Source of the DNA: Chara braunii
Taxonomy: Eukaryota > Plantae > Charophyceae
NCBI GenBank assembly: GCA_003427395.1
Contig: BFEA01000028.1
Span: 318,183 to 369,018, forward strand
Direction of reading: 5' to 3'
DNA: 50,836 bases
Part shown: positions 7,873-50,836 of the stretch, in pieces
Layout of the letters: each line of letters begins with the position of its first letter
Position numbering within the stretch: the first letter of the stretch is position 1
Notes under the pieces: generated by a model
Databases searched by the model: none
What the model was told of the DNA's origin: nothing
The model's input: the letters and a program-made list of their open reading frames with translations, nothing else
Translations under genes and position numbers: made by a program

Positions 7873-8613
7873 ATGGTCTTGCGCAATCGGATTAGATTAA
7901 TAAATTGGAACATAAGAGGCCTTGGTAATACGTCTGGTAGATACAAAAAAAAAAGATTAATGGCTTTGATGCATTCAAAGAAGGCACATATAGTGTGTCT
8001 CCAAGAAACAAAGCTTAATGCTGAGAAAATTCAGGAAGTGGCCCGTTGGTGGAGGGACCCTCAGATATGGTCTTCAGCTGATGGTACAAAGGGGGGAGTG
8101 GCCATTCTGATAAATAAGGATCTGCAGGTGGAGGTAATAGACTCCTTTTCTGACCCAATGGGGAGATGCGTTTGGGTCAAACTGGCGGTGGAGGATGAGG
8201 AATGGGTTGTAATGTCAATCTACGCGCCAGTTGACTACAAGGAGAGAACGAGGTTCTTTGCCCACCTCCCGGCCTGGATACCCGACGTTGAGAACCTAGT
8301 AATTATAGCAGACGCTTGGAATACAGTCTTCAACCCGGGTCTTGATTCACTCAAAATCTTTCCTATGCGGGAAGACTCCCTAACACTGTTTGCTTTGGCA
8401 GATGCTCAGAACCTTACTGATGTTTTCATAATCCTAAACCCTGACGATAACAACTTTACTTGGTATGGACCTCCCCCTACTCCCACCTCCCCTCAACCTC
8501 ACAAGATGCTTGATTTTTTTCTACAAGGGGAGTTATTTGCAACAGGTGTATGGAATGTGACCTGTTGGTGGATACTCTCTCTGACCACTACCCGGCGTAT
8601 ATGGATATTGTAG
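7873..8613 (+). pseudogene. LINE ORF2 apurinic/apyrimidinic-type endonuclease domain
   Basis: NWNIRGL, CLQETK, GGVAIL, SIYAP, DAWN (degenerate GDFN), FTW, LDFF. The SDH motif is shifted into another frame. Confidence 0.92.
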
Positions 8614-9016
8614 CCAGAGCGCAGTTTGAGAAGACCAGACCCCCTTCCGTCTAAATGTAAACATCCTAAAAAACAAGGGGATACCGGAATGGATAAAATG
8701 CCCAATGGCAGCATGGATGAACGCCAAGGACCTATTTCCACAGGAAAGTAGGTGGGCCGAAGTGGGTTTAGGAATTATTTCTGCAGCTTTGAGCACGTTC
8801 TCCAGGATAAAAGCGGCGAATAGGGATTGGAAGGAAAAATGTCCAAGAAAGGCGGTGGAAGAGGCTGAGCAGAAGATGGGGGCGGATCCATTCTCTGATT
8901 TCTATTGGTCCAAATGGAGAAGGGTCAACCTAGCATTGCTAGAGGAATTGGAACTTAAAAAATAGGAGGATTGGCTTAATTGGCTCAAACTGCGAGGGTT
9001 AGTTGGGTATGACCGT

Positions 9017-10621
9017 ATGACCAAGCTAACATTCAGATCCCTTATGCTAAGTAAAGTCAAACCAGTGATCAGAGAATTAAGACACCCTTCTGACCCTTCG
9101 ATGCAGGTAGTGAGTGACATTGAAAGGATGAACAACTATGCCCTTTGCTACTGTAAGGATATAGTTACAACGAGCAGGCCAAACGACAATTGTGATTCGG
9201 ACCTGTCCATAGCGTCCCATTTCTGGGACAACATAAGGGTAACATTGCCCGTCGTGGGCACTGTTTTTTTGGGCATCCCCTTTTCCCCAGAGGAATTACA
9301 TCAGGCAGCTAGGCGGATGGCAAAATGGAAGTGTCCTGACCTTGATGGCTTACCGGTTGAGCTCTTTCTCGCAGTTTGGGACTTTTTTGGCCCTTTTCTT
9401 TGTCAGATTTTTAACAATGCATTGATAACGGGTCATCTCCCTCAGAATTGGCTAGTAGGAGTTATCTCCCTGTTATACAAAAAAGGCGATAAGGAGAAAG
9501 TTAAAAACTACAGGCCTATCTCAGTGCTTAATGTAGCCTATAAGATTTTGGCTAAGGCGTTAGCGATCCGGCTGTCCGGCCTCTTACCGAATCTAATAGG
9601 CTGGGAGCAAGGGACTTTTGTACAAGGGAGATCGATATTCGACAACATAATGGCCACCATCCAAGCGCTAGAGGTCTTGGGGCGTGAGAAACAAAACGTT
9701 GCTATTCTGCTGTTAGATATGGAAAAGGCCTACAACAAGGTAGGTTGGACCTTCGTGTTTACAACGTTGTCCAAAATGAGGTTTGGACCAGGTTTTTACA
9801 GATGGGCCAAAGCAATGTATGCTGATGCTACCTCGAAAGTGTTGGTCAACGGATATCTTTCGGAGTCCTTTCCACTGTCAAGATCCCTAAGATAAGGGTG
9901 CCCTCTGGCTCCCTTGCTCTTTGTAGTCCAATTGGAAATATTGTTATGCAACATTAGATGCAATGATTAAATAGTGGGCCTTTGCCTCCCCCCAAATATT
10001 CAGTGGAAGGGGGGTGCAATAGCCGACGATCTAACCATTGCTTGCGCTAATGAACCACCGGCTCTCATTGAACTAAGAGGGGTCTTGGAGAAATATTGTT
10101 TTCTCTCTGAGGCCTCAATAAACTGGGAAAAATCAGTCTATCTTCTGCCCCCCATGTATACTTTATGTGTAGATTGGGGTTTAAGACCCATCCCGACGAA
10201 TGCGTCAGATCGCTTTTGGGGGGCTCATGTGTCCCTCACTGATTGCTCAAAAGCGCAAGACAGCATCCTAAAGGATAAAATCACGGTCAGAATTATGGAC
10301 TGGGCTAGAAAATTTCAGCTGTCCGTTTTTGGAAGGGCTTTGGTTCTCTCGTCGGCTGACTTCTCTATCATGTGGTTCCCCCTAACTGTGCATCTGCTGG
10401 GGGATAGTGCCTACAAGGCTATAAGGAAGGTAGGGGCTAAATATGTGTGGAAGCCACTAGCCACTGAAGACCAAGGTTTCATTGTCAAAGTTGCATGGGA
10501 AACGGTGGCCTGTCTTAGAGACCAGGGTGGGTTGGGAATCTTAGACCCCCTACAACAGAACATAGCCGTGTTGGCCAAGTGGCCAATCCAAGCAATATTC
10601 GGATTAAAGGATAAACTATGA
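9017..10621 (+). pseudogene. LINE ORF2 reverse transcriptase domain with in-frame stops
   Basis: KCPDLDGLP, LLYKKGD, NYRPISVLN..YKILAKAL, LDMEKAYNKV, SLR*GCPLAPLLF, IADD, GGLGI. Confidence 0.95.
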
Positions 10622-15440: not shown

Positions 15441-18400
15441 ANNNNNNNNNNNNNNNNNNNNNNNNNNNNNNNNNNNNNNNNNNNNNNNNNNNNNNNNNNN
15501 NNNNNNNNNNNNNNNNNNNNNNNNNNNNNNNNNNNNNNNNNNNNNNNNNNNNNNNNNNNNNNNNNNNNNNNNNNNNNNNNNNNNNNNNNNNNNNNNNNNN
15601 NNNNNNNNNNNNNNNNNNNNNNNNNNNNNNNNNNNNNNNNNNNNNNNNNNNNNNNNNNNNNNNNNNNNNNNNNNNNNNNNNNNNNNNNNNNNNNNNNNNN
15701 NNNNNNNNNNNNNNNNNNNNNNNNNNNNNNNNNNNNNNNNNNNNNNNNNNNNNNNNNNNNNNNNNNNNNNNNNNNNNNNNNNNNNNNNNNNNNNNNNNNN
15801 NNNNNNNNNNNNNNNNNNNNNNNNNNNNNNNNNNNNNNNNNNNNNNNNNNNNNNNNNNNNNNNNNNNNNNNNNNNNNNNNNNNNNNNNNNNNNNNNNNNN
15901 NNNNNNNNNNNNNNNNNNNNNNNNNNNNNNNNNNNNNNNNNNNNNNNNNNNNNNNNNNNNNNNNNNNNNNNNNNNNNNNNNNNNNNNNNNNNNNNNNNNN
16001 NNNNNNNNNNNNNNNNNNNNNNNNNNNNNNNNNNNNNNNNNNNNNNNNNNNNNNNNNNNNNNNNNNNNNNNNNNNNNNNNNNNNNNNNNNNNNNNNNNNG
16101 GTTTGCGCAACCCCAATCCAATTCCGAAAACCTCACCCCTCCCCCCCACTGGCCGGCACGCGGCCGCACGGCCATGACCGCGGGGTTGCGGCCACGACCT
16201 CAGTCGGGGCCGCCCACAGCCGCCTTCTTGGGAGATTCATAGATAGGCAACAAACACGAACAACCGTCTTGTGGACGCTTGGTCATGAAACTCTGTTATG
16301 GCTTGGACACGGAGTTGTCCGATGGAGGGAACGCAAATACGTGGTTCTAAGTGACCATATCTACCATGCCAGTACACGAGGCCGTTCTCACCGAGCACGT
16401 ATGAAGGAACGGTCTGACCGCGCCGCAGTATCGCGTGTATATTGTGATAATCCGGGCAGTGGTGGTACTGAGTGCGATACGTGTCGATCACCGACTGATC
16501 AGCAATGGTGACAGAGATGGCAAAAAGATGTATGGATTACTGACTGTGATCAGGACTGCGGGCCACGGCATCAGCGACGCGACTCGTTTCACCCTTGATA
16601 GGCTGAGTGGTGAAATCGAACTAAAATGTATCACGCACCAGCGCGCCTGTCAAGGGGAATGTTTAGGTTTCGTGAGAAAAGCCTAAACAACTAAGTTGTT
16701 TGTGCGCACCGTGAAGGGCGCCCCGTGCAGATAGTGACTCAATGTCGGATAACATAAACTACTGCGAGAACCTCATGTTCATCGGCAGTGTAGTTTATAT
16801 CGGCAGGCAGTGGCTGATGGGAGCAGAAAGCGATCGGACAATCTCCAACATGAGCCTTGATAGTCCCATCCTGATCGGGGAGTAAGTGATAGGAGGACTG
16901 CCAGTAGAGGGAAGTGGTGGAAGGATAGACGTCAGTCGAGAAGCAGTGTCGGCAGGAGGGGGGGAGAAGTGAGGAGTATGGGAATAAGATGAATCAGGAG
17001 GAGAACGAAACATCTGAGAAAGTACAACTATTGCTGCAAAATGTGACGCATCAGTGGTGATGATAAAGGGACGATAAAAATCCGGGAAATGAAGAACCGA
17101 CGCACAAGTCACGGTCATCTTGAGGGCGTGAAGGGCGTCCTCGCAGAGGGGTGTCCAAAACCACAGTGTGTTCTTTCAGAGGAGGGTGGAGGTAAGGATG
17201 AACATAGGAATACCTAGCGTATCCCTGGATGAAATTACTATAGTAACAAGTAAGGCCTAGGAAACTGCGAAGCTACTTGACGGATGTGGGGACAGACCAA
17301 TCCGCAATAGCAGTGATCTTCACGTCGTTCATTTGGAGCCCCTGGTCAGACATATGGTGTCCTAGGAAGTTCATTTTATGCAGGGCAAAGCAACACTAAG
17401 AAGTCATGCTTGCATAAACGTTGTTGGACATCGCGGAGGTGTCTGAGATGGTCTTCTAAGTTACGCCTGTAGACCAAGATGTCGTCTTTTTTTTTGTTTT
17501 TTTTTTTAAAGACATGCTCAAATCTATTCGTGGGGAGCAGCGCGTCCTGGGAATCGGGCCAAGCGTCCCATATGGAGACATGTAGAAAAAAATTATGAAC
17601 AAATTGAAGTACTGGGGCCATTACCCGGTTTCGGCTTGAGAGTATGCTCCAGGATCATAAACAAACTGCTGAAAATTGGGATAGATGATGAGAAAACTAC
17701 GAATATAGATGATGAGGAAAACTACGAATTCTTTTTTACGATCACTAAACACCTCCTGAAATCCGCCCGCAATTCTCCGAACGCTCAAGTATCTAAGGAA
17801 GTTCCAGTAGATCATAACAAAGCTCAGAAAAACTGACTTATTCTCTGAAAAACTCATCCAGGCCTCACGCCCTCTATCCGCTAGGTTACAGAGCAATGCG
17901 ACTCACTCCAACTCCGACCAGTGTCGTCATGTGTCAGGAACCGCCATTTGTCCCTTAGGATGACCCCGCATAGCATCCCCAAATCTCTTTACAAAGCCCC
18001 ATGCCCTCACCTTGGGCAAGTTACAGGGCATCACCCCGGCTCCGGCCAACGTCGTTCTGGCATGGAACAGCCATGGATCCTGAATATAACAGTCTAATTC
18101 CAGTGCAGCTTCGTATAAACCACCAACAGTCCCTCAGAGTCCTGGTGGTAACTGCTGCGAAGATCAATCTTTGTGAAGAAGCGGTTGCCTGCCAGATGGT
18201 CAAACAACTCATCCGTGCGAGGCATGAGATAGTTATTCTTAACCGTGTAACGGCTAAGACCGCGGTAGTTAATGTCGAGGCGGAGAGTTTCATCCCATTT
18301 GCAAGCAAAGAGGACGGGTGCATCCCAAGAGGAGTTATTAGGTTAAATAAAACCCAATCGAAAAAACTCCTCAAACCGATACTTGAGTTGTGTCACCTAT

Positions 18401-19629
18401 GGAATCGAGAGTCGGTAGGGTGCCTGATGGTGGACATGATAGTCAGGCAAGAGCTGGAAGGAATGATCAACACCACACATCGGAATGATCCCGCTATAGA
18501 AGAAGTATGGGAAAAAAATATCGCGGTACTCTCAAATCAGATCGTGGACGACGGGCTCTAAGTCGGTCGTGAACCTCGTGAGTTCCTCAATGTCGGCGTT
18601 GGCACGAGACATATGTGTAGACTTGGCAATGAACGGTGTAGGGACCAAGAATGTCGAGGGGTTATCCGCAGGCTGAGTGAATGTAGAGATAGGAGCCGTG
18701 AAGATGGAGGAAGGGTCAGGGGGACCAGACTCCAAAGGGATGAGCTCAACCTCTGGGCAGAGTGGATCATAGCGAAGAAGATCAATGACGTTCACTGAGT
18801 AGAACGTGACATCCTCCTGACGTATGAAGTAAGTGAACGGACGAGGAGAAGTGAAGGTGATGTATGGGTGGGACCCAGAGGAACGAGGGTCTTGGGGAGG
18901 TAGGTCGGGAGGGGTGTCGCTCGTGGTTCCAATGAAGGGGACTCGATAGGTTTGGCCACACTTTGTTTTGAGAAGGAGTGTCTCGGTCGCCCATTCGGCC
19001 TTTGTGCCATGGAACTGGCGAGACTAGGGAGTGCCAAGGATAAAGTCGTACCCAGTCTGTAGCACATCAAAGTATGCGGAGAAATGGTAGCGTTGAGGCG
19101 CCTGGGTACTATCCGGTGGTTGGAGGGTGAGGAAAAAGTGGAGGTAGGGGACCGTCTGATCGAAAAAGCGTTGTGTCGTGTTTTCTTAGAGGGTAACAGA
19201 GATAGGAGAACGAGACCCGAAGGTAGCTAGACGAGCTTCCTCAACCAGGCGAGGGTGAACGGAATCTCCCTGCGAGCCGAAACCTCTCAAAGCGCGATAC
19301 ACCCTCATAGATGTCCCCCAGTGGATGAAAATGATGGGCAGGGTGCGATCAAGGTCAGAGAATGGAGCGAGAAAACGGCGCAGGACGTTTATGTGTCTCG
19401 TGATTCGCTCCTGACAGTGTATAAGAGAGGGTACGTTTCACAATCACACTCTCGATAGCATAGCACCGAGAGATAACCCCCTCAAAGCATGTGTCAGTCG
19501 ACACTTAAATGTCGAAAACGACCCCTTAAATCATTGAGGGGTGCATGATTATGGGTATAGTACACCATCACTACAACTACTTGTGTATTCATGCATGGCT
19601 AGTTGATATGACAAAGCCTACGTCGCCGT

Positions 19630-20539
19630 TGTCGAGCACGTCGGCTCCCGCCTTTTTGCAACGGCTATGTCACGCAAGTGTAAAACATAAACAAAACAGA
19701 GTCAATTCAGGGACGACGCATAAATAATCCCATGAGTCATCGAGATGGGTGAGATTGAGTCGTCCCTTCGCCACTCTAGCCGGGTGCGCCAGTTGTACAT
19801 CCCGCAATCCCCGACATAATGATAGGTTTCTACGGGGCATAAACTTTCCTTCCCTAAGGGGTTGTCACCACGCTTAGGGGTGTATCCCTACCGAGCTACT
19901 AACCCACGTATGAAAATTTTTATACGCAATCGTAGAGGTAAGTCAGCTGAGGGCATTTGCTCATTCACTGTAGTATGGAAAACGCTTGGTTAAACGCCGA
20001 GTGGACCCGAATGTCGTCCGTTTCCTGGGCGTTGATCTCCTAAGTACGGAGCGTACATTGGTCGACTAGGACGGTCTTAACCAAGCGTGAAACCCATAAA
20101 ATAATCTTAGTGCCTTGACATTTTTTTTAAAACAAAACAGTAAAGTCAATACACCTTATATCATATCATGCAAGATTGGGTTTTCAACTTGATGAGATGG
20201 TTTGCCGAAGTTATTCTTCGCAACCTATATGAATGAAGATATTTATACTACCATTTTCTGATACAGAAGCTCACTATTGACAAAAAGAATTAGAAAGAAC
20301 CAACATTTGAACTCCCGGTTCATTGTTTAACTTAGTAAAGGTTTTTCCTCATTTCAATCAATGTATGCATGACATACATTGGTACACGTTTAATTACCCC
20401 TCAATGCATAAGCATGACAGTGCAATCATCAGGATAATCTAGATAATATTCATCCAGTTGGTCCTATTTACAATGTTGTTTTTTTTTTAATCCTCGGAGA
20501 GTCATATAGACACGACTCTATCATAGGGACACTCAATGT
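19630..20539 (-). repeat. LTR-like repeat family A, copy 1, left part (PBS-proximal/U5 end at 19630)
   Basis: Begins TGTCGAGC. Colinear with 34239-35180 and with the PBS-adjacent sequence at 43774-43945 plus 49390-49830. Confidence 0.85.
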
Positions 20540-27879: not shown

Positions 27880-29650
27880 ATGAGGCATCTGAATATCATA
27901 AAAGACGCACCTAGCAGAGATAGAGCTTTCAACCCTCACGCACCTCAGCTTTAGTCTGGTCGAGTCGTGCGAGCTCCTTGTCATCAAAAGTCAAGGTGGT
28001 AATGTGTCTGCCCTGCATGATCCGAACCATCCGTGTACCATAGAGGGAAGCCATCTGAGAGGCTAGCTTCCAAACTATAGTGCGAAACGACTGTCGCATC
28101 CGAAAGAGGTGCCTAGGCGTAGTGTCCCTAATCCGAATGACGCTGTAGCGCTCCCCGGATAGGGTAATTTTAACACTCACAATGACCCGAGAGAGGCATT
28201 GGAGGTTGCTCGAGAAATGAAAATACAAAGTATATCCATAAAATTCATTTGGAAGTCGGGCCACATTGGCACGGACATTCACGCGCGAGTCAGGGAAGAA
28301 TCATTGCCCATCTTTGAGTAACCTAGTAAAACCAACCCAATGACTGATCACATCATCTTAAACAAATAAAAGTCGCTCCGCGCGCCGAATCAACACTTCA
28401 TTCAATATGTTGTGAATCAACAAATACGTCGCTTGAGTGAGATTCCGCCGTCTGCTGACCATCTGCACATTCGAAGGAAATGTAAGTCTTGGAGACGTTC
28501 CCCGATCTCATACGCCTCACCATCAAATGCGAAGACAGAAAAACGTTCAGAGCGAAAGATACTAAATCTATTTGCTCGAATTTGTCTCACAGGATAAAGA
28601 AGACTGAAGGGACCTTGCTGATCATTCAACTATAACAAAATATGACAGAACATCCTGCTAATCTCAGGAGCGTCCTTCCTAATTTGATTTGCCTCATGAA
28701 CTACGACGAGATTCATATCTCTTAAGTCCCGGGTCGGATTAGGAGACGCAAAATCATGTCGTAGAATATGTCTTGCTCCGGAAAAACTTCATGCGGGTTG
28801 TAAACTAATCGTCCTTTCCGTATCATACCGGCACGTGATCGTGTCGACACTGCTATCCAATCTATCACCGCCTCGCGTGTACTGAATAATCGAATAATCA
28901 CCGCTTTTGTAGACATCTGGACGACAAAATAATATCTTTAACAAAATAAATTTATATACACTAATCTCTTTACTCCAACTCCCTTTTTCCTCGGGTCGTG
29001 ATTTTTCAGTCACAGTCCTATCGAGAAGATCGTACCTATTTAACACATCCAATACTATTAGGTACATGAATTGGGCTTCTTTTCACACCAGTTCACCATA
29101 CGTCAGTGACACTTAAGATGACCAAAAAGAAAAAGGTATTGACTTCAACCTTTCCCCACTTCAATGCATGGAAAAATGACTACCCTTAGCTATGGAACAC
29201 CCTACCCTCTAGAAAGTGGTCTGGAATACCCCTTTTCCTCGCACGAACACATTGTTTAGATCTCAGAAGTTGGGCTGACTCCACCACGATACAGCATGGT
29301 ATTCCCCCGTTTGAATAGTCCACTCTTGTCAATAACAGAGTCGGCTACTAAAGCAGCGAACCCCTGCCCCAGATGCTTCCTAGAGAGAAGAAGTCCCAAT
29401 CTCTAGGTGTAATAATTTTTTCTATATTTTCCACTGGGGTTTGACTTAGACGAAATGACAATAAGATAAAAAAGAATACTGAGATTGAGACTTCTTTTGG
29501 ACGGGCATAAAAAGATAAGTCATTTACGATAGAACGAAATGTCGCTTTGGAAAATTTTAAATCCTTCTCTTTGTTTTCTTAATCCGAATTTTTTTTTCTT
29601 TCTGCACCCAATATCCTTTTCCTTTTCCAATGTATTGTTTTTTATGACAT
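27880..29650 (-). repeat. Continuation of family A LTR / 3' region, copy 1
   Basis: Colinear with ~35180-36960. Similarity ends at a shared ATGACA (a possible TG... start on the minus strand). Confidence 0.8.
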
Positions 29651-32059: not shown

Positions 32060-34238
32060 GAGAGAACTCGTAGTGGGCAAAGCGCGACCGAAAGGCGGTC
32101 TCCGGCTGGTCCTCTACGGCAATGCGGAGCTGGTGGTAACCGCTACGAAGATCAATCTTTGTGAACAAGCGGTTACCTGCCAGACGGTCAAACAACTTAT
32201 CCGTGCGAGGCATGAGATAGTTATTTTGAATAGTGTAACGACTAAGACCTCGTTACTCAATGTAGAGGCGGAGAGTTTCATCTGCTTTGCAAGCAAAGAG
32301 GATGGGTGCTCCCAGAGGGGAGTTACTAGGTTTAATAAAACCCAGTCGAAGGAGCTCCTCAAGCCGATGCTTGAGTTGTATCACCTCTGGAATCGAGAGT
32401 TAGTAGGGTGCCTGATGGTGGACACGATAATCAGACACGAGCTGGAAGAAATGCTCAACCCCACGCATCGGAATAATCCCGCTGTATGAGAAGTACGGGG
32501 GGAAAAAGTCGCGGTACTCTCAAATAAGATCGTGGACGGCGGACTCTAAGCCGGTCGTGAACCTCGTGAGTTCCTCAATGTCTGCGTTGGCACGAGACAT
32601 ATATGTGGACTCGACAATCAATGGCGTAGGGACATGGGATGTCGAGGGGGTATCCGCAGGCTGAGGAGTGAATGTAGAGATAGGAGTCGTGAAGATGGAG
32701 GAAGGGTCAGGGGGATCGGACTCTAAAGAGATGAGCTCAACCTCTGGGCAGAATGGAACACAGCGAAGAAGATCCATGACGTTCACTAAGTATAACGTGA
32801 CATTCTCTTGATGTATGGGTTGGACCCAAAAGAACGAGGGTCCTAGGGAGTTAGGTCGGGAGGGGTGTCGCCCGTGGTTCCAATGAAGGAGACTCGATAG
32901 GTTTGACCACACTTCATTTTGAGAACGAGTATCTCAGTCGCCAATTCGGCCTCTGTGTCAAGGAACTGTCGGGACTAGGGAGTGCCAAGAATGAAGTCGT
33001 ACCCAGTCTGTAGCACGTCAAAGTATGCGGAGAAATGGTAGCGTCGAGGCGCCTGGGTACTATCAGGTGGCTGGAGGGNNNNNNNNNNNNNNNNNNNNNN
33101 NNNNNNNNNNNNNNNNNNNNNNNNNNNNNNNNNNNNNNNNNNNNNNNNNNNNNNNNNNNNNNNNNNNNNNNNNNNNNNNNNNNNNNNNNNNNNNNNNNNN
33201 NNNNNNNNNNNNNNNNNNNNNNNNNNNNNNNNNNNNNNNNNNNNNNNNNNNNNNNNNNNNNNNNNNNNNNNNNNNNNNNNNNNNNNNNNNNNNNNNNNNN
33301 NNNNNNNNNNNNNNNNNNNNNNNNNNNNNNNNNNNNNNNNNNNNNNNNNNNNNNNNNNNNNNNNNNNNNNNNNNNNNNNNNNNNNNNNNNNNNGAATGAA
33401 GTCGTACCCAGTCTGTAGCACGTCAAAGTATGCGGAGAAATGGTAGCGTCGAGGCGCCTGGGTACTATCAGGTGGCTGGAGGGTGAGGAAAAAGTGGAGG
33501 TAGGAGACCGTCTGATCGAATAAGCATTCTGTCGTGTTATCTCCAAAGGTAATGGAGATAGGAGAGCGAGACTTGAAAGTAGCTAGACGAGCTTCCTCGC
33601 CAATTCGGCCTCTGTGTCAAGGAACTGTCGAGACTAGGGAGTGCCAAGAATGAAGTCGTACCCAGTCTGTAGCACGTCAAAGTATGCGGAGAAATGGTAG
33701 CGTTGAGGCGCCTGGGTACTATCAGGTGGCTGGAGGGTGAGGGAAAAGTGGAGGTAGGAGACCGTCTAATCGAATAAGCATTCTGTCGTGTTATCTCCAA
33801 GGGTAATGGAGATAGGAGAGCGAGACTCGAAAGTAGCTAGACGAGCTTCCTCAACCAGGCGAGGGTGAACAAAATCGCACTGTGAGCCGGAGTCTCATAA
33901 AGTGCGATACACCCTCATAAATGTCCCCCAGTGCATGAAAATGATGGGCAGGGTCCGATCACGGTCAGAGAGCAGAACGAGAAGACGACGCAGGACGTTT
34001 ATGTGTCTCGTGATTCACTCCTGACTGTGTGCAAAAGTGGGTACGTCTCGCAATCGCACTTGCGATAGTATAGCACCGAGAGATAAAACCCTCAAAGTGT
34101 GTGTAAGCCGACACTTAAGTGTCGACCCCTGAAATCATTGAGGGGCGCATGATTCTGGGTACCATATAGTACACCATCACTACGACTGCTTGCGTATTCA
34201 TGCATGGCTAGTTGATATGACAAAGCCTACGTCGCCGC
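32060..34238 (-). pseudogene. Second copy of the Ty3/gypsy pol 5' fragment (RT N-terminal part and upstream region)
   Basis: [50 protein letters not shown]. Colinear with ~18135-19629. Confidence 0.9.
32941..33850. repeat. Local ~260-bp tandem duplication around an assembly gap
   Basis: GAATGAAGTCGTACCCAGTCTGTAGCACG occurs at ~32989, ~33394 and ~33648. Confidence 0.85.
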
Positions 34239-36962
34239 AGTCGAGGGCGTCGGTTCCCGCATTTTTGCAAAGTTCGGAAGCCCTCTCGACCATGTCACGC
34301 AAGAGTAAAACATAAACAAAACAGAGTCAACTTGGGGACGACGCATAAATAATCCCATGAGCGACCAAGACGAGCGTAGTCGCGTTGTCCTTCGCCACTC
34401 TAGCCGGGTGCGTCTGCTGTACATCTCGTGGTCCCCTACGACAGCATAGGTTCTCGCGGGGCATAAACTTTCCTTCCCTAAGGGGGTTGTCACCACTCTT
34501 AGGGGTGTATCCCTACCGAACTACTAACCCACATACGAAAACTTTTATATGCAATCGTAGAGGTAAGTCAGCCGAGGGCGTTCGCTCGTTCGCCGTAGTA
34601 TAGGAAACACTTGGTTAAACGCGGAGTGCACCCGAACGCCGTTCATTCCCTAGGGCGTTGATCTCCTAAGTACGGAGCGTACGTTGGTCGACTAGGACGG
34701 TCTTAACCAAGCGTGAAACCCATAAAATAATCTTAGTTTCTTGACAAGTTTTTGAAAACAAAACAGTAAAGTCAATACACCTTATGTCATATCACGCAAG
34801 ATCGAGTTTTTAACTTGATGAAATGATTTGTCAAAGTTATTCCGAGTCTTCGCAGCCTATATGACGGAAGATATTTAAACTACCATTTTCTGATACAGAA
34901 GGCTTAGCTCGCTATTGACAAAAAAAATAGAAAGCACCAACATTTGAACTTCTAGTTCATTGTTTGACTTGGTGACGTTTTTTTCCTCATTTCAATCAAT
35001 TTACGCATGTCATACATTGGTACACGTTTAATTACCCCTCAATGCATAAGCATGATAGTGCAATCATCGGGGCAATCCATATATTATCCATCCAGTTGGT
35101 TGTATCTACAATTTTTTTTTTTTTTTAATTACCATCGGAGAGTCATATAGACATGAGTCTATCACAGGGACACTCAACACGGCACCTGAATATCATAAGA
35201 GACGTATCTAGCAGAGATAGAGTTGTCAACCCTCGCGGGCCTCAGCTTTAGTCTGGTCGAGTCGTGCGAGCTCCTCGTCATTAAACGTCAAGGTGGTAAT
35301 GCATCTGCCCTGCATGACCCGAACCATCCGTGTACCATAGAGGGAAGTCATCCAGGAGGCTAGCCTCCAAACTATGGGAGGAAACGGGTATCGCATCCGA
35401 AAGGGGTGCCTAGTCGTAGTGTCCCTAATCCGAATGACGTCGTAGCGCTCCCCAGATAGGGTAATTTTAACACTCACAATAACCAGAGAGAGGCATTAGA
35501 GGTTGCTCGCGCGATGAAAATACAAAGTATATCCATAAAGTTCATTCGGAAGTCGGGCCACATTGGTACGGACATTCTCAGGGAAGAATCATTGTCCATC
35601 TCTTAGTAACCAACTCAATGAGTGAGCGCATCATCTTGAACAAATAAAAGTCGCTCCGCGCGCCGAATCAGCCCTTCATCCAATATGTCACGAATCAGCA
35701 AATACGTCACTTGAGTGAGATCCCGCCGTCCACTGACCATCTGCACAGGAAATGTAAGTCTTGGAGACGTTCCCCAATCTCATACGCCTCACAATCAAAT
35801 GCGAAGACAGAAAAACGTTCAAAGTGAAAGATATTAAATTTATTTGCTCAAATTTATCTCACAAGATAGAGAAGACTGAAAGGACATTGCTAATCATTCA
35901 ACCATAGAAAAATATGAAGGAACATCCTGCTAATATCAGGAGCATCCTCCCTAATTTGATTCGTCTCATGACTTACGACGAGATTCATATCTCTTAAGTC
36001 CCGGATCGGATTAGGAGGCGCAAAATCATATCGTACAATATGTTGTCCGTGCTATGCTGTAAGAACATAACTTCGTGGAGGATTCCTCACGCTTTCATCC
36101 CAAAATCGCGGTTCGTCTTGCTCCGGAAAAACTTCATGAGGGTTGTAAATCAATCGTCCTTTTTGTATCATACCGGCACGTGATCGTGTCAGCACTGCAT
36201 TTCAATCGATCACCGCCTCGCGTATACTGAATAATCGAATAATCACCGCTTTTGTAGACATCTGGACTATACACTAATCTCTTTACTCCAACTCCCTTTT
36301 TCCCCGGGTCGTGATTCTTCTGTCACAGTCCTACAGTGAAGGTAGTGCCTATTTGCACTCCATCCAATACTATTAGGTACATGAATTGAGCTTTTTTTTG
36401 CACCAGCTCCCCATACGTATGTGACACCTAAGATGGCCACAAAAAAAAGGAACTGACTTCAGCCTTTCCCCACTTGAATACATGGAAAAATGACTACCCT
36501 TAGCTACGGAATACCCTACCCTCTAGAAAGTGGTATGTTATACCCCTCCTCCTCGCCCGAACACATTGTTTAGATTTCAGAAGTTGGGCTGGCTTCACCA
36601 CGATACAGCGTGGTATTCCCCCGTTTGAACGATTCACTCTAGGTCAATAACAGAGTCGGCTCCTAAAGCAACGAACCCGTGCCCGAGATGCTTCCTAGAG
36701 AGAAGAAGTCTGAATCTCTAGATATAATCATTTTTACCTATACTTTTCACTGGGATTTGACTTGGACGAAATGAGAATAAGATAAAGAAAAATATTGAGA
36801 TTGAAACTTCTTTTGGGAGGGCATAGAAAAATTTTTAGGTAGAACGGGATATTCCCTTAGAAAATATCAAATCCTTCTATTTTTTTTTTTAATCATAATT
36901 TTGTTTTCCTTTCTGCACCGAATATCCTTTTCCTTTTCCAATGTGTTGTTCTTTACATGACA
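34239..36962 (-). repeat. Family A LTR / 3' region, copy 2 (likely 3' LTR of the element at 37.5-43.8 kb)
   Basis: Its left end matches the PBS-adjacent LTR end at 43774, and it lies downstream of the integrase. The inner boundary and PPT were not identified. Confidence 0.75.
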
Positions 36963-43773: not shown

Positions 43774-43945
43774 TTTCGAGCGCATCGGCTCCCGCCTTTT
43801 TGCAAAGTGCGGGAGCTCTCCCGACCATGTCACGCAGGAGTAAAACATAAACAAAACAGAGTCTCGGGAACGACGCATAAATAATCCTACGAGCCGCCGA
43901 AACGGCCACGGTCGCGTTGTCCCTTTGTTACTCTGGCCGGGTGCA
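43774..43945 (-). repeat. 5' LTR (family A), U5 end, interrupted at ~43945
   Basis: Matches 34239-34411 and 19630-19787. The terminus reads CGAAA instead of CGACA. Confidence 0.85.
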
Positions 43946-45060
43946 ACAAGCTATTCGTGAAAAGTGGGCAAAAAAAAAGTTCAGTTTGCAAAATCCACAA
44001 CTTGAATGTTTTCCATAGAAAACTATTTTCGGTCAAACGCAATGTGACTCGTTGCTCATATGTCACCACAACTTTGAGGAAATTTCAGGAAAACCTATTT
44101 TTAAAAAAAACGAAAAAGCTTGTTGAAAAAAAAAAAAAAAAGTTTTTATATAAATTATGAGTATAGCCACTGTTGTGGTTATAAGAAGATGTATCACCGA
44201 TGGCACTGCGAAGACAACGAAACAGGAAAAGGGTCCCACGTGTAGGGGCCCCTGCATGCATAGGGAGGGGCGCATGCATAGAGCCCCCCCATATATATAG
44301 GGGGTCCACTGTATGCATATAGAGCAGCTTACATGGGGGCCCAGAAGGGGGGGCCTGCAAGGATCCCCGCATATGGGGGGGCCCCTCCATGCATATCTAG
44401 AGGGGGGGGCCGGTGCATGCATGGGGTATGCCCATATGAGGGGCCCCGACATGTATGGGGCCCTATGCACAGGGGAACCCCTTTAACCATTCCTCCAATT
44501 CATATATCTCGATATGGGCTGACCCGCTATGTGAGGCATATATGGGCCCTCGTGCATAGGGGTCCCTCATGCTTGCATGACCTTCAGACATGCATTTTTC
44601 TTGGGGGTTTTGCATGCATGGGGGGACCCAATGCCCCCCATATATGGGGGACCCTGTATACGCGGGGGCCCTTATGTAAGTTGCACACATGCATGCCAAC
44701 CCCCATGTATGGCGGCCCCCCAAGCACATGCATGCATTGGGGGGGGGGGCATATATGCCCCCAATTCATATATCTCAATAAGCAATGACAAACCAAAATT
44801 CGATACTTGTAAAATGCCATAAGTTTAATTTTGTTGTGATCCAGGGAAAAGTTTCATCCCAAATTGAACAACCATTGCAACCTTCCACTACCTTCAATCC
44901 CCTGCCTTTCGCTGCCGTCAATCCCCCACCTTCCCCCGACTTCTATCCCCCGCCTTCAATCTCCCGCCTTCAATCTCCCGCCTTCAATCTCCCGCCTTCA
45001 ATCCCCCAGCTCCCGCTACCTTCAATCCCCCACCTTTCCACGCCTTCCCCCCCCCCGCCT

Positions 45061-45145
45061 TCACCTTTCTCGCCCTTTTGGCTAAGATCAAATATAGTAT
45101 CTGTTCTGATCAGTATAATATCTGATCCGTGACTCATTGGGCCGC
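45061..45145 (+). pseudogene. U2: U2 snRNA 5' fragment, copy 1
   Basis: ACCTTTCTCGCCCTTTTGGCTAAGATCAAATATAGTATCTGTTCTGATCAGTATAATATCTGA resembles the plant U2 5' end. Ends in an A-tract before the Sm site. Confidence 0.9.
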
Positions 45146-45265
45146 TAAAAAAAATAAAAAAATAAATCCCGCCACCTTCCTTTTGCCGCCTTCCCGCACC
45201 TTGCCCCACGTTCACTCCCGCACCTTGCCCCGCCTTCCAGAGAAGGTTAACAACAGTCGTATTTT

Positions 45266-45860
45266 TCATCACCACTTCAGGACACCCTTCACCACTTCAG
45301 GATGCAGCCTGCCTAAACAGGTGGTTTTCAGGATCTTCGGACCTTTCACCACTTCAGGACCATTCAGGTCTGAAAATCCTGAATGGTCCTAAAGTGGTAA
45401 AAGCTCCGAAGACCCTGAAAACCACCTGTTTAGGTAGGCTGCATGCTCAAGTGGTGAAGGGTGGTTTTCATGGTCTTCGGACCTTTCACCACTTCAGGCG
45501 CATCCAGGATTTCAAACTGTCAAAAACTCTCACTTAACCACTTCAGGACGCCCTTCACCACTTCAGACCTGAATGGTCCTGAAGTGGTGAAAGCTCCGAA
45601 GACCCTGAAAACCACCTATTTAGGCAGGCTGCATCCTCAAGTGGTGAAGGGTGGTTTTCATGGTCTTCGGACCTTTCACCACTTCAGGACCATTCAGGAT
45701 TTTCAGATTGCCCAAAACTCTCATCTCACCACTTCAGGACACCCTTCACCACTTCAGGATGCAGCTTGCCTAAACATGTGGTTTTCACGGTCTTCGGACC
45801 TTTCACCACTTCAGGACCATTCAGGATTTTCGACTGCCCAAAACTCTCACTTCATAATTT
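45266..45860. repeat. Minisatellite block of TTCACCACTTCAGGA units in mixed orientation
   Basis: Many direct copies plus inverted copies (AAGTGGTGAA). Confidence 0.9.
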
Positions 45861-46069
45861 TCATTCCTGAATTTTCAGCTACCCGATAACCGCTTGTGCT
45901 GCCTTCCTCCACCTTGCACCGCCTTCCTTCCCCTGCATTCCCCTACCTTCCGCTGCCTTCAATCCCCTACCTTTCGCTGCCTTCAATCCCCCACCTTTCA
46001 CGACCTTCAATCCCCCACCTTTCGCTGCCTTCAATCCCCCACCTTTCCCTGCCTTCCCCCCCCCCGCCT

Positions 46070-46154
46070 TCACCTTTCTCAACCTTTTGGCTAAGATCAA
46101 GTGTAGTATCTGTTATGATCAGTTTAACATCTGATCCGTCGCCCATCGAGGCAC
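46070..46154 (+). pseudogene. U2: U2 snRNA 5' fragment, copy 2
   Basis: CCTTTTGGCTAAGATCAAGTGTAGTATCTGTT with intact branch-point recognition sequence GTAGTA, followed by (TAA)n. Confidence 0.92.
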
Positions 46155-46412
46155 TAAATAATAATAATAATAAAATCCGCCACCTTCCTTTCCCCGTCTT
46201 CCCGCACCTTGCCCTGCCTGCCCTCCCCTGCTATCCCGCTGCCTGCCTTCCTGCGCCCCAAGTCGCTGCACTTGTGTTCTCCCCACGTAATCGATCATTT
46301 TTCAAACTGGCCGATTACGTAATCGGTCAATTTCAAGAACGACCGATAAAGTAATCGACTGTTTTTGGAACTGGCCGATTACACAATCGGCCTTTCTTGA
46401 AACTGACCGATT

Positions 46413-47527
46413 GATGTAGCTTAATGGTTAGAGCACCGGTTGGAAATATGCATTGTGGTATGAGGTTGCAGCCTTGCGCATGGACACCAGCAGGGCGTTA
46501 GAATGACGCACGACTCGACACACATTCCCTTGGGCTGACACACGGTAAGGTTATAAAGACACTGCCTGCGCACCACCCAAGGGTTGTCCATGGTGTTGTA
46601 TGTCGGGTCTTGATAGTACTGCGTGGGTTGCTTGTGGCGGTTGCTCGTGATTTTTTGTTGATCTCCCCAGTTTGGCATATCACACACAGAGACCGTTTGC
46701 AATTGTTGCTCAAATGGTAGAGTCTTCAGGTCACAGCTTGGCCTGTCATCTCTTCAAGACGAACACATAGATCCCTCTACATAGCACTGCACATATCTGG
46801 CCATCGGGCACATACATCTTGCTGTACAGTTACACATAGCGCACATAGACTGCACATATTTGGCCTTCGGGCACATACATCTCGCTATACAGGTACACAG
46901 AGCACACATAACCTTTGGGCAGATACAAAACACATGGCCCTATGGGTTCATACAAACATATACAGAGCCTCTGGACATACACACATACACACAAATTACG
47001 ATACTGGGCTGGGGGGGTCTATCAGGTATATGACGAGGTCTACTCACGCATGGCTTAGCTCTGGGGTAGGTTTAGGGATATAAGTCGCTCCGGTTAGTCT
47101 GAGTTCCGCCTAGCCTTGGGTAAGCTAGGGGAAGGACGGTAGGATGTGTCCGCGGGCGCTGACCTACCTTGCTTAGGTAATCCTGGCAGGTAGACTCTCT
47201 GAATTGGGCCTGTAGAAGATTGCATGAGCCTGACGTTCAAAGTTCCCGTACGGCAAGGTTCGTCCCCTTCCACTTCCGTCAAGGCTGGGAGGTTGGCCCA
47301 ACCTTGGTGCTTGCCACTGCTGTTTGGTCCAAGTTGCCCTCGATACTGGTAAGGTGAGGGTCCGGAGTGTTGGTCACACTGAGGTAGGATAGTAGCGACA
47401 AGGGTTGTGTTGGGAGTATTAACGTAGGGATGGGTAGGGTAAGTGACCTATCCTGTCAGGACAACCATTGGTTGCCGCTACTATCAATCACCGAGGGTCT
47501 AGTCCTTGGTCTCTACAACACTCCGGG

Positions 47528-47581
<54 letters not shown>

Positions 47582-47593
47582 AACAACAACAAC
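46413..47593 (+). mobile_element. tRNA-headed SINE-like retroposon with poly(A)/(CAA)n tail
   Basis: A-box-like TAGCTTAATGGTTAGAGC, degenerate B-box GGTTGCAGCC, CACCA at ~46489, A-tract 47532-47579 plus (CAA)n, and flanking GACCGATT / GATCGATT. Confidence 0.65.
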
Positions 47594-47675
47594 GATCGAT
47601 TACGTAATCGGTCGTTTTTGAAACACTGATTAGTACGTAAGCGATCAGTTTAAAAAACGACAGATTATGTGGGGA

Positions 47676-48049
47676 GGTTCGTCCGCTTCCGCTTCCGTCA
47701 GGGCTGGGAGGTTGGCCCAACCTTGGTGTTTGTCACTGTTGTTTGGTCCAAGTTGCCCTCTATACTGGTAGGGTGAGGGTCCTGAGTGTTGGCCACACTG
47801 AGGCAGGATAGTAGGGACAAGGGGTGCGTTGGAGTATTAACGTGGGGATGGGTAGGGTAGGTGGCCTATCCTGTCAGGACAACCATTAGTTGTCGCTACT
47901 AGCAATCACCGAGGGTCTGGACCTTGGCCTCTACAACACTCTGGGTTAAACAACAACAACAACAACAACGACCGATTACGTAATCAGCCGTTCTTGAAAC
48001 TGACTAATTACGTAATCGGTCAGTTTCAAAAACGACCGATTATGTGGGG
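47676..48049 (+). repeat. Tandem duplicate of the SINE-like 3' end plus flank (~47256-47674)
   Basis: Colinear from AGGTTCGTCC through CTCTACAACACT, (CAA)n and GATTATGTGGGGA. Confidence 0.88.
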
Positions 48050-48195
48050 ATAACATAGGTGCGACAAGTCAGGGCGCAGGAAGGCAGGCCGCGGGATAGC
48101 AGGGAAGGGCAAGAGGGAAAAGGCGGGGGAATACGCGGGAGGGAAGGCAGGGCAAGGAAGGTGGCATATTTTTTAATTATTAATTTTTTTTTTTA

Positions 48196-48280
48196 GTGCC
48201 CCGATGAGCGTTGGATAAGATATTAAACTGATTAGAACACATACTACATTTGATCTTAGCCAAAAGGCCGAGAAAGGTGA
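48196..48280 (-). pseudogene. U2: U2 snRNA 5' fragment, copy 3
   Basis: Reverse complement reads ACCTTTCTCGGCCTTTTGGCTAAGATCAAATGTAGTATGTGTTCTAATCAGTTTAATATCT. Confidence 0.92.
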
Positions 48281-48513
48281 AGGCGTGGGGGGGAAAGGCG
48301 GGGAAAGGTGAGGGATTGAAGACAGCGGAAGGTGGAGAAATGTAGGGAAAGGAAGGCGGTGCACGGCGGAGGAAGGCGGTGCACGGCGGAGGAAGGCGGG
48401 GCAAGGTGTGGGAGGGAACGCGGGGCAAGGTGCGGGAGGGAGCGCGGGGCAAGGTGCAGGAAGGCGGCGAAAGGAAGGTGGCGGGATTTTAAGTTTGTAA
48501 TTTTTTAATTTTA

Positions 48514-48598
48514 GCGGCCCGATGGGCCACGGATCAGGTATTATACTGATCAGAGCAGATGCTACACTTGATCTTAGCCAAAAGGCCGAGAAAGGTGA
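48514..48598 (-). pseudogene. U2: U2 snRNA 5' fragment, copy 4
   Basis: Reverse complement reads ACCTTTCTCGGCCTTTTGGCTAAGATCAAGTGTAGCATCTGCTCTGATCAGTATAATACCTGATCCGTGGCCCATCGGGCCGC. Confidence 0.92.
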
Positions 48599-49389
48599 AG
48601 GCNNNNNNNNNNNNNNNNNNNNNNNNNNNNNNNNNNNNNNNNNNNNNNNNNNNNNNNNNNNNNNNNNNNNNNNNNNNNNNNNNNNNNNNNNNNNNNNNNN
48701 NNNNNNNNNNNNNNNNNNNNNNNNNNNNNNNNNNNNNNNNNNNNNNNNNNNNNNNNNNNNNNNNNNNNNNNNNNNNNNNNNNNNNNNNNNNNNNNNNNNN
48801 NNNNNNNNNNNNNNNNNNNNNNNNNNNNNNNNNNNNNNNNNNNNNNNNNNNNNNNNNNNNNNNNNNNNNNNNNNNNNNNNNNNNNNNNNNNNNNNNNNNN
48901 NNNNNNNNNNNNNNNNNNNNNNNNNNNNNNNNNNNNNNNNNNNNNNNNNNNNNNNNNNNNNNNNNNNNNNNNNNNNNNNNNNNNNNNNNNNNNNNNNNNN
49001 NNNNNNNNNNNNNNNNNNNNNNNNNNNNNNNNNNNNNNNNNNNNNNNNNNNNNNNNNNNNNNNNNNNNNNNNNNNNNNNNNNNNNNNNNNNNNNNNNNNN
49101 NNNNNNNNNNNNNNNNNNNNNNNNNAAGGTGGGGGATTGAAGGCGATAGTTGTAAAATGCCATAAGCTTTATTTTGTTTGTGTACTTGTGCAACAACTCC
49201 CCGAAAATTTTTTCTTCTATCAAACAAACCGTTAGCCTTAAGGTATTCCCCAAATTAGTTTCCCTAAATTAGTTTTCTTGTTTATCTTCTTGACTCTATT
49301 TTGTTATGATTTCCAAAATACTAGTTTTATAAAAAAACTTGGTGGTTGCAAACGGAAAACGAGTTCCAGAAATTAAAAAAATATAGTTT

Positions 49390-50022
49390 TTCTTCCCTAA
49401 GGGGTTGTCACCACCCTTAAGGACAAACCCCTACCGAGCTACTTACCCACATATGAAAGTTTTTATATGCAATCGTAGAGGTAAGTCGGTCGAGGGCGTT
49501 TGCTCATTCGCTGTACTATAAGAAACACTTGGTTAAACGCCACGTAGACTTGAACGCCGTCCGTTCCCTATGACGCTGATCTCCTAAGTACGGAGCGTAC
49601 GTTGGTCGACTTGAATGGTCTCAACGAAGCGTGAAACCCGTAAAATAATCATAGTCCCTTGACAATTTTTTGAAAACAAAACAGTAAAATCAATACACTT
49701 TATATCATATCACGCAAAATCGGGTTTTCAACTTGATGAGATGGTTTGCCGAAGTTATTCTTCGCAGCCTATATGACCAAAGATCTTTATACTGTCATTT
49801 TTTGATACACAAGTTCGCTATTGACGAAAAAATTATAAACAACCAAGCGTGTAAGCCATAAAAATTTCATAGTCCCTTGATAATTTTTTGAAAACAAAAC
49901 AATAGAATCAATACACTTTATATCATATCACGCAAGATCGGGTTTTCAACTTGATGAGATGGTTTACGCAGCCTATATGACCAAAGATTTTTATACTGCC
50001 ATTTTCTGATATAGAAGCTCAC
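49390..50022 (-). repeat. Resumption of family A LTR, with an internal ~170-bp duplication
   Basis: Matches 34472-34930 and 19848-20290. 49628-49820 is repeated at ~49846-50020. Confidence 0.88.
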
Positions 50023-50685
50023 TCTTAGGCATGCTTGCAGAACTGGTTGAGGAGCACCCGCTTTCCCCAACCTCCTATGTTGCCGATTCGACTTCCTAAT
50101 GCCCGCCTGACCAGCGAGTACGAGCAGACTAACGCTCGCCGACAGGAAGTCTTCGCTAACACCTTCTAATCCCCTCCCGCCATCACTACACTCCTCCGAG
50201 AAGCGTATATGGCTTAACTCACCGAGGGAACATGGCTACAATCAAGGAGACGTATTCTTCGCAGGCGCTTCGCTCACAAGTATGTTTCTGCTCAAGCATA
50301 CCCACTGATAAATCCCTTAAAAAACCACCCTACCTTCTTTCCCCAGTCCATTTTTTTTTAATTCCCCCCCCCCCCTCCCAATCTGCTAACTAGTACGGAG
50401 CATTCTCCCTCTGACGAGCTGCTATGGGTGCTAAGCAGCGAAAAAGGGCGTGCACCCCCCAATGGTTGTCTTCAACAACCATCTCTAACCTCAGTCTAAC
50501 CTCTAATCTGCTCCCGCCTAATTGATGATATAAAACTAACATGCATCCTCCTAGTATGGAGTTGATTACTAAATTTCCCTCTCTTAAAACTAATATGTGT
50601 ATGGCCTACTGCTAACTTGTCGCGTGTTTACGATTGGACAAATACATGGTCTGGTTCCCCATTGTATATGGGGCAGTCGTGTTAT

Positions 50686-50723
50686 ACACACCCATTACAC
50701 ACACACACACATTGACACACACA

Positions 50724-50764
<41 letters not shown>
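50686..50764. repeat. (CA)n microsatellite
   Basis: Directly visible. Confidence 0.95.
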
Positions 50765-50766
<2 letters not shown>

Positions 50767-50802
50767 GTCTCTTATACACATCTAGATGTGTATAAGAGAC
50801 AG
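50765..50802. other. Nextera mate-pair junction adapter (two head-to-head Tn5 mosaic ends); sequencing artefact
   Basis: Exact CTGTCTCTTATACACATCT + AGATGTGTATAAGAGACAG. Confidence 0.99.
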
Positions 50803-50836
50803 GACAAGGGGTGCGTTGGAGTATTAACGTGGGGAT

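What the first reader, a model, noticed from the sequence alone, without database searches (positions are those of the whole stretch)
44880..49146. Fold-back element whose inverted arms each carry two U2 snRNA 5' fragments
Seen: four ~85-nt U2 fragments (two +, two -) in mirror arrangement. Each is preceded by the same CCTTCAATCCCCCACCTT / CCCCGCCTTC repeats and followed by an A-rich tract and CCGCACCTTGCCC repeats. All stop at the same point after stem IIb, before the Sm site. Known: this part of U2 holds stem I, the branch-point recognition sequence and stems IIa/IIb. U2-derived SINEs (SINEU in crocodilians) and U2-targeting LINEs (Keno, Utopia) exist, but I know of no U2 module built into long terminal inverted repeats. 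Inference: a retrocopied U2 fragment was captured and amplified as a unit of a fold-back/MULE-like element. A read-through transcript would form a long hairpin able to yield U2 sense and antisense small RNAs.
Basis: partly seen in the sequence, partly recalled or inferred. Interest (0 to 1): 0.82.

Follow-up and report, generated by a model that had tools for sequence, protein, structure and literature searches.

The report
Duplicated U2 retropseudogene palindrome in Chara
A dead, shortened copy of the splicing RNA U2 landed in a C-rich minisatellite of the alga Chara braunii and was copied side by side and then in mirror image; it is decaying repeat DNA, with no sign so far that it moves as a transposon.

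Summary
Rfam finds four U2 hits above threshold, two on each strand. Each is an 83-nt U2 5' part (stem I to stem IIb), followed by an A-rich tract and sharing C-rich repeat flanks.

The genome is Chara braunii. In 261 kb sampled elsewhere I found 3 U2 and 5 U6 retrocopies. Two of those three U2 copies also end just before the Sm site with poly(A), but in unrelated flanks. The module is therefore an ordinary LINE-made, 3'-truncated snRNA retropseudogene.

Here one such copy was amplified as DNA. First came a tandem duplication (units A and B), then an inverted duplication (C pairs with B, D with A). The arms are now only 76-90% alike.

Later events are a MITE-like insertion at 45239-45899, whose empty site survives in the other arm, and a dispersed tRNA-headed SINE at the centre.

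Transposon hallmarks are missing. There is no flush short TSD, the termini are ragged, and I found no second copy.

An unexplained 35-nt direct repeat flanks the block. Misassembly is unlikely.

Earlier unchecked notes of this scan report U2 modules in arrays and in opposite orientation on other DNA of this genome.

The parts
44801..44841 (+). Left copy of the 35-40 nt direct repeat that flanks the whole block
   Evidence: 35 nt at 91% identity to 49144-49178. The exact 17-mer occurs only at these two places in the window.
44881..45062 (+). Unit A: upstream C-rich 24/14-nt minisatellite
45063..45145 (+). Unit A: U2 5' module (83 nt)
   Evidence: Rfam U2, 78.5 bits
45146..45238 (+). Unit A: A-rich tract (to 45167), then C-rich CCGCACCTTGCCC-type repeats
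45239..45899 (.). Later MITE-like insertion made of ~92-nt hairpin repeats, with a 7-8 bp duplication (C/T)GCCTTCC
   Evidence: Hairpin pairs I6-I18. Filled site compared with the empty site in the C-D arm.
45900..46071 (+). Unit B: upstream 24-nt minisatellite
46072..46154 (+). Unit B: U2 5' module (83 nt)
   Evidence: Rfam U2, 78.4 bits
46155..46284 (+). Unit B: A-rich tract, then C-rich segment
46285..46410 (.). 32-nt repeats with an 18-nt palindromic core; inner end of the left arm
   Evidence: Mirror match 46183-46367 / 47963-48147 (pair I2).
46411..47579 (+). Nested tRNA-headed, poly(A)48-tailed SINE-like retroposon
   Evidence: Collinear with L001 16772-15466, which has a ~15-nt TSD, and with L008 7787-6710
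47580..48050 (+). (CAA)n plus 32-nt repeats, then a tandem duplicate (47675-48050) of the SINE 3' part and those repeats
   Evidence: 47256-47675 against 47675-48050 is 80.5% overall and 91% in the SINE part
48051..48195 (-). Unit C: C-rich segment and A-rich tract
48196..48278 (-). Unit C: U2 5' module (83 nt)
   Evidence: Rfam U2, 68.9 bits
48279..48513 (-). Unit C minisatellite, joined directly to unit D's C-rich repeats and A-rich tract (the empty site of the MITE)
48514..48596 (-). Unit D: U2 5' module (83 nt), the best preserved
   Evidence: Rfam U2, 91.8 bits
48603..49125 (.). Assembly gap inside unit D's minisatellite
49126..49146 (-). Outer end of the right arm: minisatellite motif
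49144..49185 (+). Right copy of the flanking direct repeat

Best explanation
This is a locally amplified U2 retropseudogene, not a working RNA gene and probably not a transposon.

Step 1 (inferred from known LINE biology). A LINE reverse transcriptase copied U2 snRNA from its 5' end up to the single-stranded A/U-rich stretch before the Sm site. The cDNA, with an A-rich tail, was inserted in or next to a C-rich minisatellite.

Step 2 (shown). The unit of minisatellite, 83-nt U2 part, A-tract and C-rich repeats (about 320-360 nt) was duplicated in tandem, giving an A type and a B type.

Step 3 (shown). The two-unit block, together with the adjoining 32-nt palindromic repeats, was duplicated in inverted orientation. 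The result is A B | C D, where D pairs with A and C pairs with B.

Step 4 (shown). Afterwards a MITE-like element entered the A-B spacer. A tRNA-headed SINE sits at the centre and was partly re-duplicated; when it inserted relative to the inverted duplication is not resolved.

All copies are decaying independently. The block sits inside a 5.4-kb stretch that interrupts a dispersed repeat (R family). If transcribed through, it could fold into an imperfect hairpin, but nothing shows that this happens or matters.
For: Retrocopy nature:
- U2 homology starts at about nt 3, stops after stem IIb, and is followed by an A-tract.
- The window carries a LINE with an endonuclease and a reverse transcriptase.
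- In 12 other C. braunii loci (261 kb) Rfam finds 3 U2 and 5 U6 retrocopies.
- L011 and L007 run to about nt 95 and then carry poly(A) of 18-21 nt. L001 stops at about nt 58 with an A-rich tail and a GTGGCGA duplication. All three have unrelated flanks.
- In human, truncation of snRNA retropseudogenes clusters in specific short segments; the authors propose priming at single-stranded stretches of the snRNA (PMC4476161).

DNA-level amplification:
- The four copies share both flanks and the exact end point.
- Four U2-core columns group (A,D) against (B,C). Identity is 88.5% for A-D and 80% for B-C, against 76-81% for the other pairs.
- The B-C mirror match continues into the 32-nt repeats.

Later insertions: an empty site is preserved in the other arm, and the SINE family is found in L001 and L008.

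Neutral decay: each copy carries its own changes in stem I, the branch-point recognition sequence or stem IIb.

One locus: the flanks 43776-43944 and 49388-49846 match parts of repeat R that lie only 58 nt apart in its two other copies.
Against: - A 35-40 nt direct repeat brackets the block. This looks like the mark of an insertion, so the palindrome may have formed elsewhere and been inserted here.
- Earlier unchecked notes of this scan mention U2 fragments in opposite orientation inside a transposon-like element, and U2 tandem arrays, elsewhere in the genome.
- My search for other copies covered only about 0.3 Mb of a genome I recall to be close to 2 Gb.
- The target-site duplication of the original retrocopy cannot be read, because its flanks are low-complexity (a possible CCCGCC).
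Confidence: 0.6

Rival explanations
1. It is a copy of a non-autonomous fold-back (long-TIR, FB/Galileo/Tetris- or MULE-like) DNA transposon. Its inverted ends are built from U2-bearing subrepeats, and it was inserted here as a unit.
For: The arms are long inverted repeats made of tandem subrepeats around a palindromic centre, as in Tetris and Galileo (PMC4079207). A 35-40 nt direct repeat flanks the block, and the block lies in DNA that the other R copies lack.
Against: There is no flush short TSD. The left repeat copy lies about 40 nt from the arm, and 35-40 nt is far from the 7-10 bp of FB, Galileo, Tetris or MULEs. The arm ends are ragged minisatellite without a distinct terminal motif. 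No second copy of any flank component was found in the window or in 261 kb of other loci. The peptide word search and the metagenome pattern scan were blank. The arms are 10-24% diverged.
Confidence: 0.17
2. The mirror arrangement is an assembly artefact: a strand flip or false join in a short-read, mate-pair assembly.
For: The assembly carries Nextera mate-pair junction adapters at 50765-50802, in L006 (a 245-nt-period array) and in L008. There is a gap inside arm D. The centre holds palindromic 32-nt repeats.
Against: The arms are only 76-90% identical. The longest exact inverted match between them is 24 nt, so they are distinct sequences joined within a gap-free contig. The B and C junctions with the 32-nt repeats are mirror images. 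The outer flanks belong to one R copy and share a direct repeat. The chimeric read at the window end joins 50764 to 47816-47849. That implies one ~2.95-kb molecule in the scaffold's order and orientation across the gap, although it is probably the same data that built the scaffold.
Confidence: 0.06
3. It is a functional hairpin-RNA locus. Read-through transcription makes double-stranded RNA and sense/antisense small RNAs to U2, or a U2 5'-domain decoy.
For: Only the geometry: inverted arms that could pair.
Against: The copies decay independently, with hits in stem I, the branch-point recognition sequence and stem IIb. Arm identity is low. No listed holder of this stretch is on record as RNA.
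Confidence: 0.04

Closest known systems
3'-truncated snRNA processed pseudogenes (Group II of Doucet et al. 2015, PMC4476161; classes II/III of Denison and Weiner)
   Same: The 5' end is complete or nearly so. The 3' end lies in a single-stranded segment of the snRNA. There is an A-rich tail. Such copies are made in trans by a LINE, and independent copies in the same genome show TSDs and clustered 3' ends.
   Different: Here one retrocopy was re-amplified as DNA with its flanks, in tandem and then inverted. Its own TSD is unreadable. The density of such copies in C. braunii (8 U2/U6 hits in 0.26 Mb, sampled near LINE genes) is roughly 30 times the human figure, taking 3,512 snRNA hits over a genome I recall as about 3 Gb.
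Foldback-type DNA transposons with internally repetitive TIRs (Drosophila FB, Galileo, Tetris; PMC4079207)
   Same: Long inverted arms composed of tandem subrepeats, a variable non-coding middle, and no coding capacity.
   Different: No 7-10 bp flush TSD, no distinct terminal domain, no other copies found, and arms 10-24% diverged. The subrepeat carries an snRNA retrocopy.
SINEU, the snRNA-headed SINEs of crocodilians (Kojima 2015, PMC4494074)
   Same: A U2-derived 5' segment is part of a repeated unit.
   Different: SINEU copies are dispersed retroposons with a common body, a poly(A) tail and their own TSDs. Here the four copies share both flanks, so they are DNA duplicates, and no dispersed copy with this body was seen.

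Membership tests
3'-truncated snRNA retropseudogene | snRNA homology beginning at or near nucleotide 1, without gene flanks | tested here: met
   The modules start at ACCTTTCTCGG. Independent C. braunii copies start at ATACCTTTCTCGG. Upstream is minisatellite.
3'-truncated snRNA retropseudogene | 3' end inside a single-stranded segment of the snRNA, followed by an A-rich tract | tested here: met
   The modules end right after stem IIb, before the Sm site, and are followed by 22-30 nt of A-rich sequence. L011 and L007 have a similar end, about 7 nt further on.
3'-truncated snRNA retropseudogene | Target-site duplication around the retrocopy | tested here: inconclusive
   CCCGCC is possible on both sides, but the flanks are low-complexity C-rich repeats.
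Foldback / long-TIR DNA transposon | Long terminal inverted repeats with internal tandem repeats | tested here: met
Foldback / long-TIR DNA transposon | Short TSD of fixed length (7-10 bp) flush with both termini | tested here: not met
   The bases next to 44881 and 49146 do not match. The only flanking repeat is 35-40 nt and is offset by about 40 nt on the left.
Foldback / long-TIR DNA transposon | Several dispersed copies with the same termini | tested here: inconclusive
   None in the 50-kb window or in 261 kb of other loci. The wider searches were blank. The genome itself could not be searched.
SINEU-like snRNA-headed SINE | Each copy is an independent retro-insertion with its own flanks, a terminal poly(A) and a TSD | tested here: not met
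   All four copies share their upstream and downstream flanks.
Functional U2 snRNA gene | Sm site and 3' stem-loops III and IV | tested here: not met
   In all four Rfam alignments nearly all model positions beyond about 90-109 are unmatched, apart from a few forced end positions.

The most novel reading that the evidence does not exclude
The block is one copy of a Chara-specific fold-back mobile element. Its inverted ends are arrays of a U2-retrocopy-bearing subrepeat, and it inserts with an unusually long (35-40 bp) target duplication. It would be related to the other U2-module arrays that this scan noted in the genome.
Probability: 0.1. Interest if true: 0.55.

Novelty: new member of a known kind. 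Interest (0 to 1): 0.22.

Why it matters
The locus itself matters little. It shows how an snRNA retrocopy can be swept into minisatellite and palindrome growth.

The wider point is of moderate interest. C. braunii seems to carry U2 and U6 retrocopies at a density far above mammals, with a preferred U2 3' end just before the Sm site. These copies keep turning up inside tandem or inverted repeats. A genome-wide census would show whether this is only a very active LINE system or something more organised.

The locus also flags mate-pair adapter contamination in the public assembly.

Tried and rejected
- Reads. No depth, junction, RNA or small-RNA evidence could be obtained.
There are two exceptions to report. 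The findings look-up by place (asked for 46200-48100) was widened by the tool itself to 44700-49600. One local BLAST inside the sandbox used the whole window against three fetched loci; later scripts masked the U2 cores.
- Findings look-ups by sequence or relatives were blank.
- The word search with the 59-aa minisatellite ORF gave no hit.
- The exact 20-mer scan of metagenome contigs gave no hit.
- A tRNA scan of the window found nothing. The SINE head is tRNA-like only by eye and by its L001 relative.
- The miRNA-family hits in the hairpin repeats are all far below gathering scores and were rejected.
- No inverted or direct similarity was found between the AT-rich parts 43945-44230 and 49186-49387.
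- An in-situ template-switch model does not readily yield the flanking direct repeat, so its origin stays open.
Full report
OBSERVATION

Rfam's U2 model matches four places above its gathering score: 45061-45180(+), 46070-46188(+), 48156-48280(-) and 48489-48598(-), at 69-92 bits. In each, the true homology is 83 nt: 45063-45145, 46072-46154, 48196-48278 and 48514-48596. It covers stem I, the branch-point recognition sequence and stems IIa and IIb. It ends at the same base in all four and runs into a 22-30 nt A-rich tract. The Sm site and the 3' stem-loops are absent.

Upstream of each module lie 24-nt C-rich repeats, and downstream lie CCGCACCTTGCCC-type repeats.

THE GAP

All four modules lie on the gap-free stretch 44880-48602, so the mirror arrangement does not rest on the gap. 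The gap's left edge is the first bases upstream of module D. Its right edge (49126-49146) is the minisatellite motif in the same orientation. The gap therefore sits inside D's minisatellite and may hide one more ~320-nt unit.

The window ends in a Nextera mate-pair junction adapter (50765-50802), followed by an exact copy of 47817-47849. That chimeric read implies one ~2.95-kb molecule running from 47816 to 50764 in the scaffold's order and orientation. It agrees with the gap estimate, though it is probably part of the data that made the scaffold.

ANATOMY

I call the units A (44881-45238, +), B (45900-46284, +), C (48051-48440, -) and D (48400-48602 plus the gap, -).

- BLAST and alignment give 87-88.5% for A-D and 76-83% for B-C. 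In the alignment of the shared part, A-B is 81% and C-D 76%.
- Four columns in the U2 core group (A,D) against (B,C); two columns disagree.
- The B-C mirror match continues inward into 32-nt repeats whose core is an 18-nt palindrome: 46183-46367 against 47963-48147.

So a two-unit tandem block, with its adjoining 32-nt repeats, was duplicated in inverted orientation.

The 661 nt at 45239-45899 are hairpin repeats flanked by (C/T)GCCTTCC. The C-D arm keeps the uninterrupted site, so this is a later MITE-like insertion.

The centre, 46411-47579, is a tRNA-headed retroposon of about 1.17 kb ending in A48. Collinear copies lie in two other C. braunii loci, one of them with a ~15-nt TSD. Its 3' part, together with 81 nt of 32-nt repeats, was duplicated again in tandem (47256-47675 against 47675-48050). 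Without these additions the structure is a near spacer-less palindrome with arms of about 830 nt.

CONTEXT

The best protein relatives of the window's LINE reverse transcriptase are C. braunii proteins. One window segment is 98% identical to a C. braunii scaffold.

The window holds three copies of a dispersed repeat, R. In the third copy the parts 43776-43944 and 49388-49846, which are 58 nt apart in the other two copies, are separated by 5.4 kb that contains the U2 block. Both outer flanks thus belong to one locus.

A 35-nt direct repeat (91% identical, extendable to about 40 nt) lies at 44801 and 49144. It is flush with the right arm but about 40 nt from the left arm.

WHAT THE U2 MODULE IS

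I fetched 12 other C. braunii loci (261 kb) around LINE genes. Rfam finds 3 U2 and 5 U6 hits in them.

- The U2 copy in L001 starts at U2 nt 1, stops at about nt 58, and has an A-rich tail and a GTGGCGA duplication.
- The copies in L011 and L007 run through stem IIb to about nt 95 and then carry poly(A) of 18-21 nt.
- None of the three has the C-rich flanks seen here.

Retrocopies ending just before the Sm site therefore arise repeatedly in this genome. This matches the known pattern for LINE-made snRNA retropseudogenes. Their truncations cluster in specific short segments, and priming at single-stranded stretches of the snRNA has been proposed (PMC4476161). The window itself has a LINE with an endonuclease and a reverse transcriptase.

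The four modules here share flanks and end point, so they descend from one such retrocopy by DNA duplication.

The 24-nt upstream repeat matches the first 16 nt of the module at 14 of 16 positions; only 2 of 2000 shuffles do as well. Either the minisatellite grew by re-copying the module's 5' end, or microhomology guided the insertion.

IS IT A TRANSPOSON?

The architecture resembles foldback elements such as Tetris and Galileo, with long arms made of tandem subrepeats. The defining marks fail or are untested.

- There is no flush 7-10 bp duplication.
- There is no distinct terminal domain.
- No other copy of any flank component was found in the window or in the 261 kb.
- The peptide word search and the metagenome pattern scan were blank.

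The sampling is tiny relative to the genome, so mobility is not excluded. The 35-40 nt flanking repeat does suggest that the block was inserted as a whole by some route.

IS IT AN ARTEFACT?

The assembly does contain adapter chimeras. However, the arms differ by 10-24%, and the longest exact inverted match between them is 24 nt. The junctions of B and C with the central repeats are mirror images. The outer flanks belong together. I rate misassembly as unlikely.

FUNCTION

Each copy has its own damaging changes: A and B in stem I, D in the branch-point recognition sequence, B and C in stem IIb. The U2 core is not clearly better conserved than its flanks. This looks like neutral decay.

A read-through transcript could fold into an imperfect hairpin, but that is inference only.

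VERDICT

This is an ordinary 3'-truncated U2 retropseudogene caught up in minisatellite growth, tandem duplication and an inverted duplication, later invaded by a MITE-like element and with a SINE at its centre. It is a new instance of known kinds of event.

Earlier notes of this scan (unchecked) report U2 modules in tandem arrays and in opposite orientation, and dense U2/U6 retrocopies, on other DNA of this genome. My small sample agrees on the density.

Noticed in passing
window 50765-50836; L006 15621-20562; L008 18847-18890: The Nextera mate-pair junction adapter (19+19 nt) is assembled into the sequence. At the window end it is followed by an exact copy of 47817-47849. In L006 it recurs every 245 nt, as an artefactual array lying inside a called 2909-aa 'gene'.
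   Followed up: partly
L001 14285-14427, L007 15943-16049, L011 14373-14505, plus five U6 hits in L001, L003, L005, L007 and L008: There are 3 U2 and 5 U6 retrocopies in 261 kb of C. braunii DNA sampled around LINE genes. Two of the three U2 copies end at about nt 95 with poly(A). This density is far above mammalian figures.
   Followed up: partly
window 45239-45899: A MITE-like element built of alternating ~92-nt inverted repeats, with a 7-8 bp duplication (C/T)GCCTTCC and weak terminal inverted similarity.
   Followed up: partly
window 46411-47579; L001 16772-15466; L008 7787-6710: A dispersed retroposon family of about 1.2 kb, with a tRNA-like head, internal 63-nt repeats and a poly(A) tail. 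The L001 copy has a ~15-nt TSD.
   Followed up: partly
window 44891-45047 and 45932-46056, compared with the U2 module's 5' end: The 24-nt minisatellite unit matches the first 16 nt of the U2 module at 14 of 16 positions (2 of 2000 shuffles reach this). The repeat may derive from the module's own 5' end.
   Followed up: partly
window 43945-49387: A 5.4-kb stretch replaces about 55 nt of a third copy of a dispersed repeat. The other two copies are at 18142-20536 plus 27884-29644, and at 32130-36955. Besides the U2 block, the stretch holds AT-rich DNA and a CATGCATGGGG-type satellite (44230-44760).
   Followed up: partly
window 46285-46410, 47595-47675, 47969-48050: 32-nt repeats with an 18-nt perfect palindrome (ACCGATTACGTAATCGGT). 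The spacers mostly alternate in orientation, so the array is itself hairpin-prone. It forms the centre of symmetry.
   Followed up: no
window 7873-9895: LINE remnants on the + strand: an endonuclease/exonuclease/phosphatase domain and a reverse transcriptase domain in separate ORFs.
   Followed up: partly
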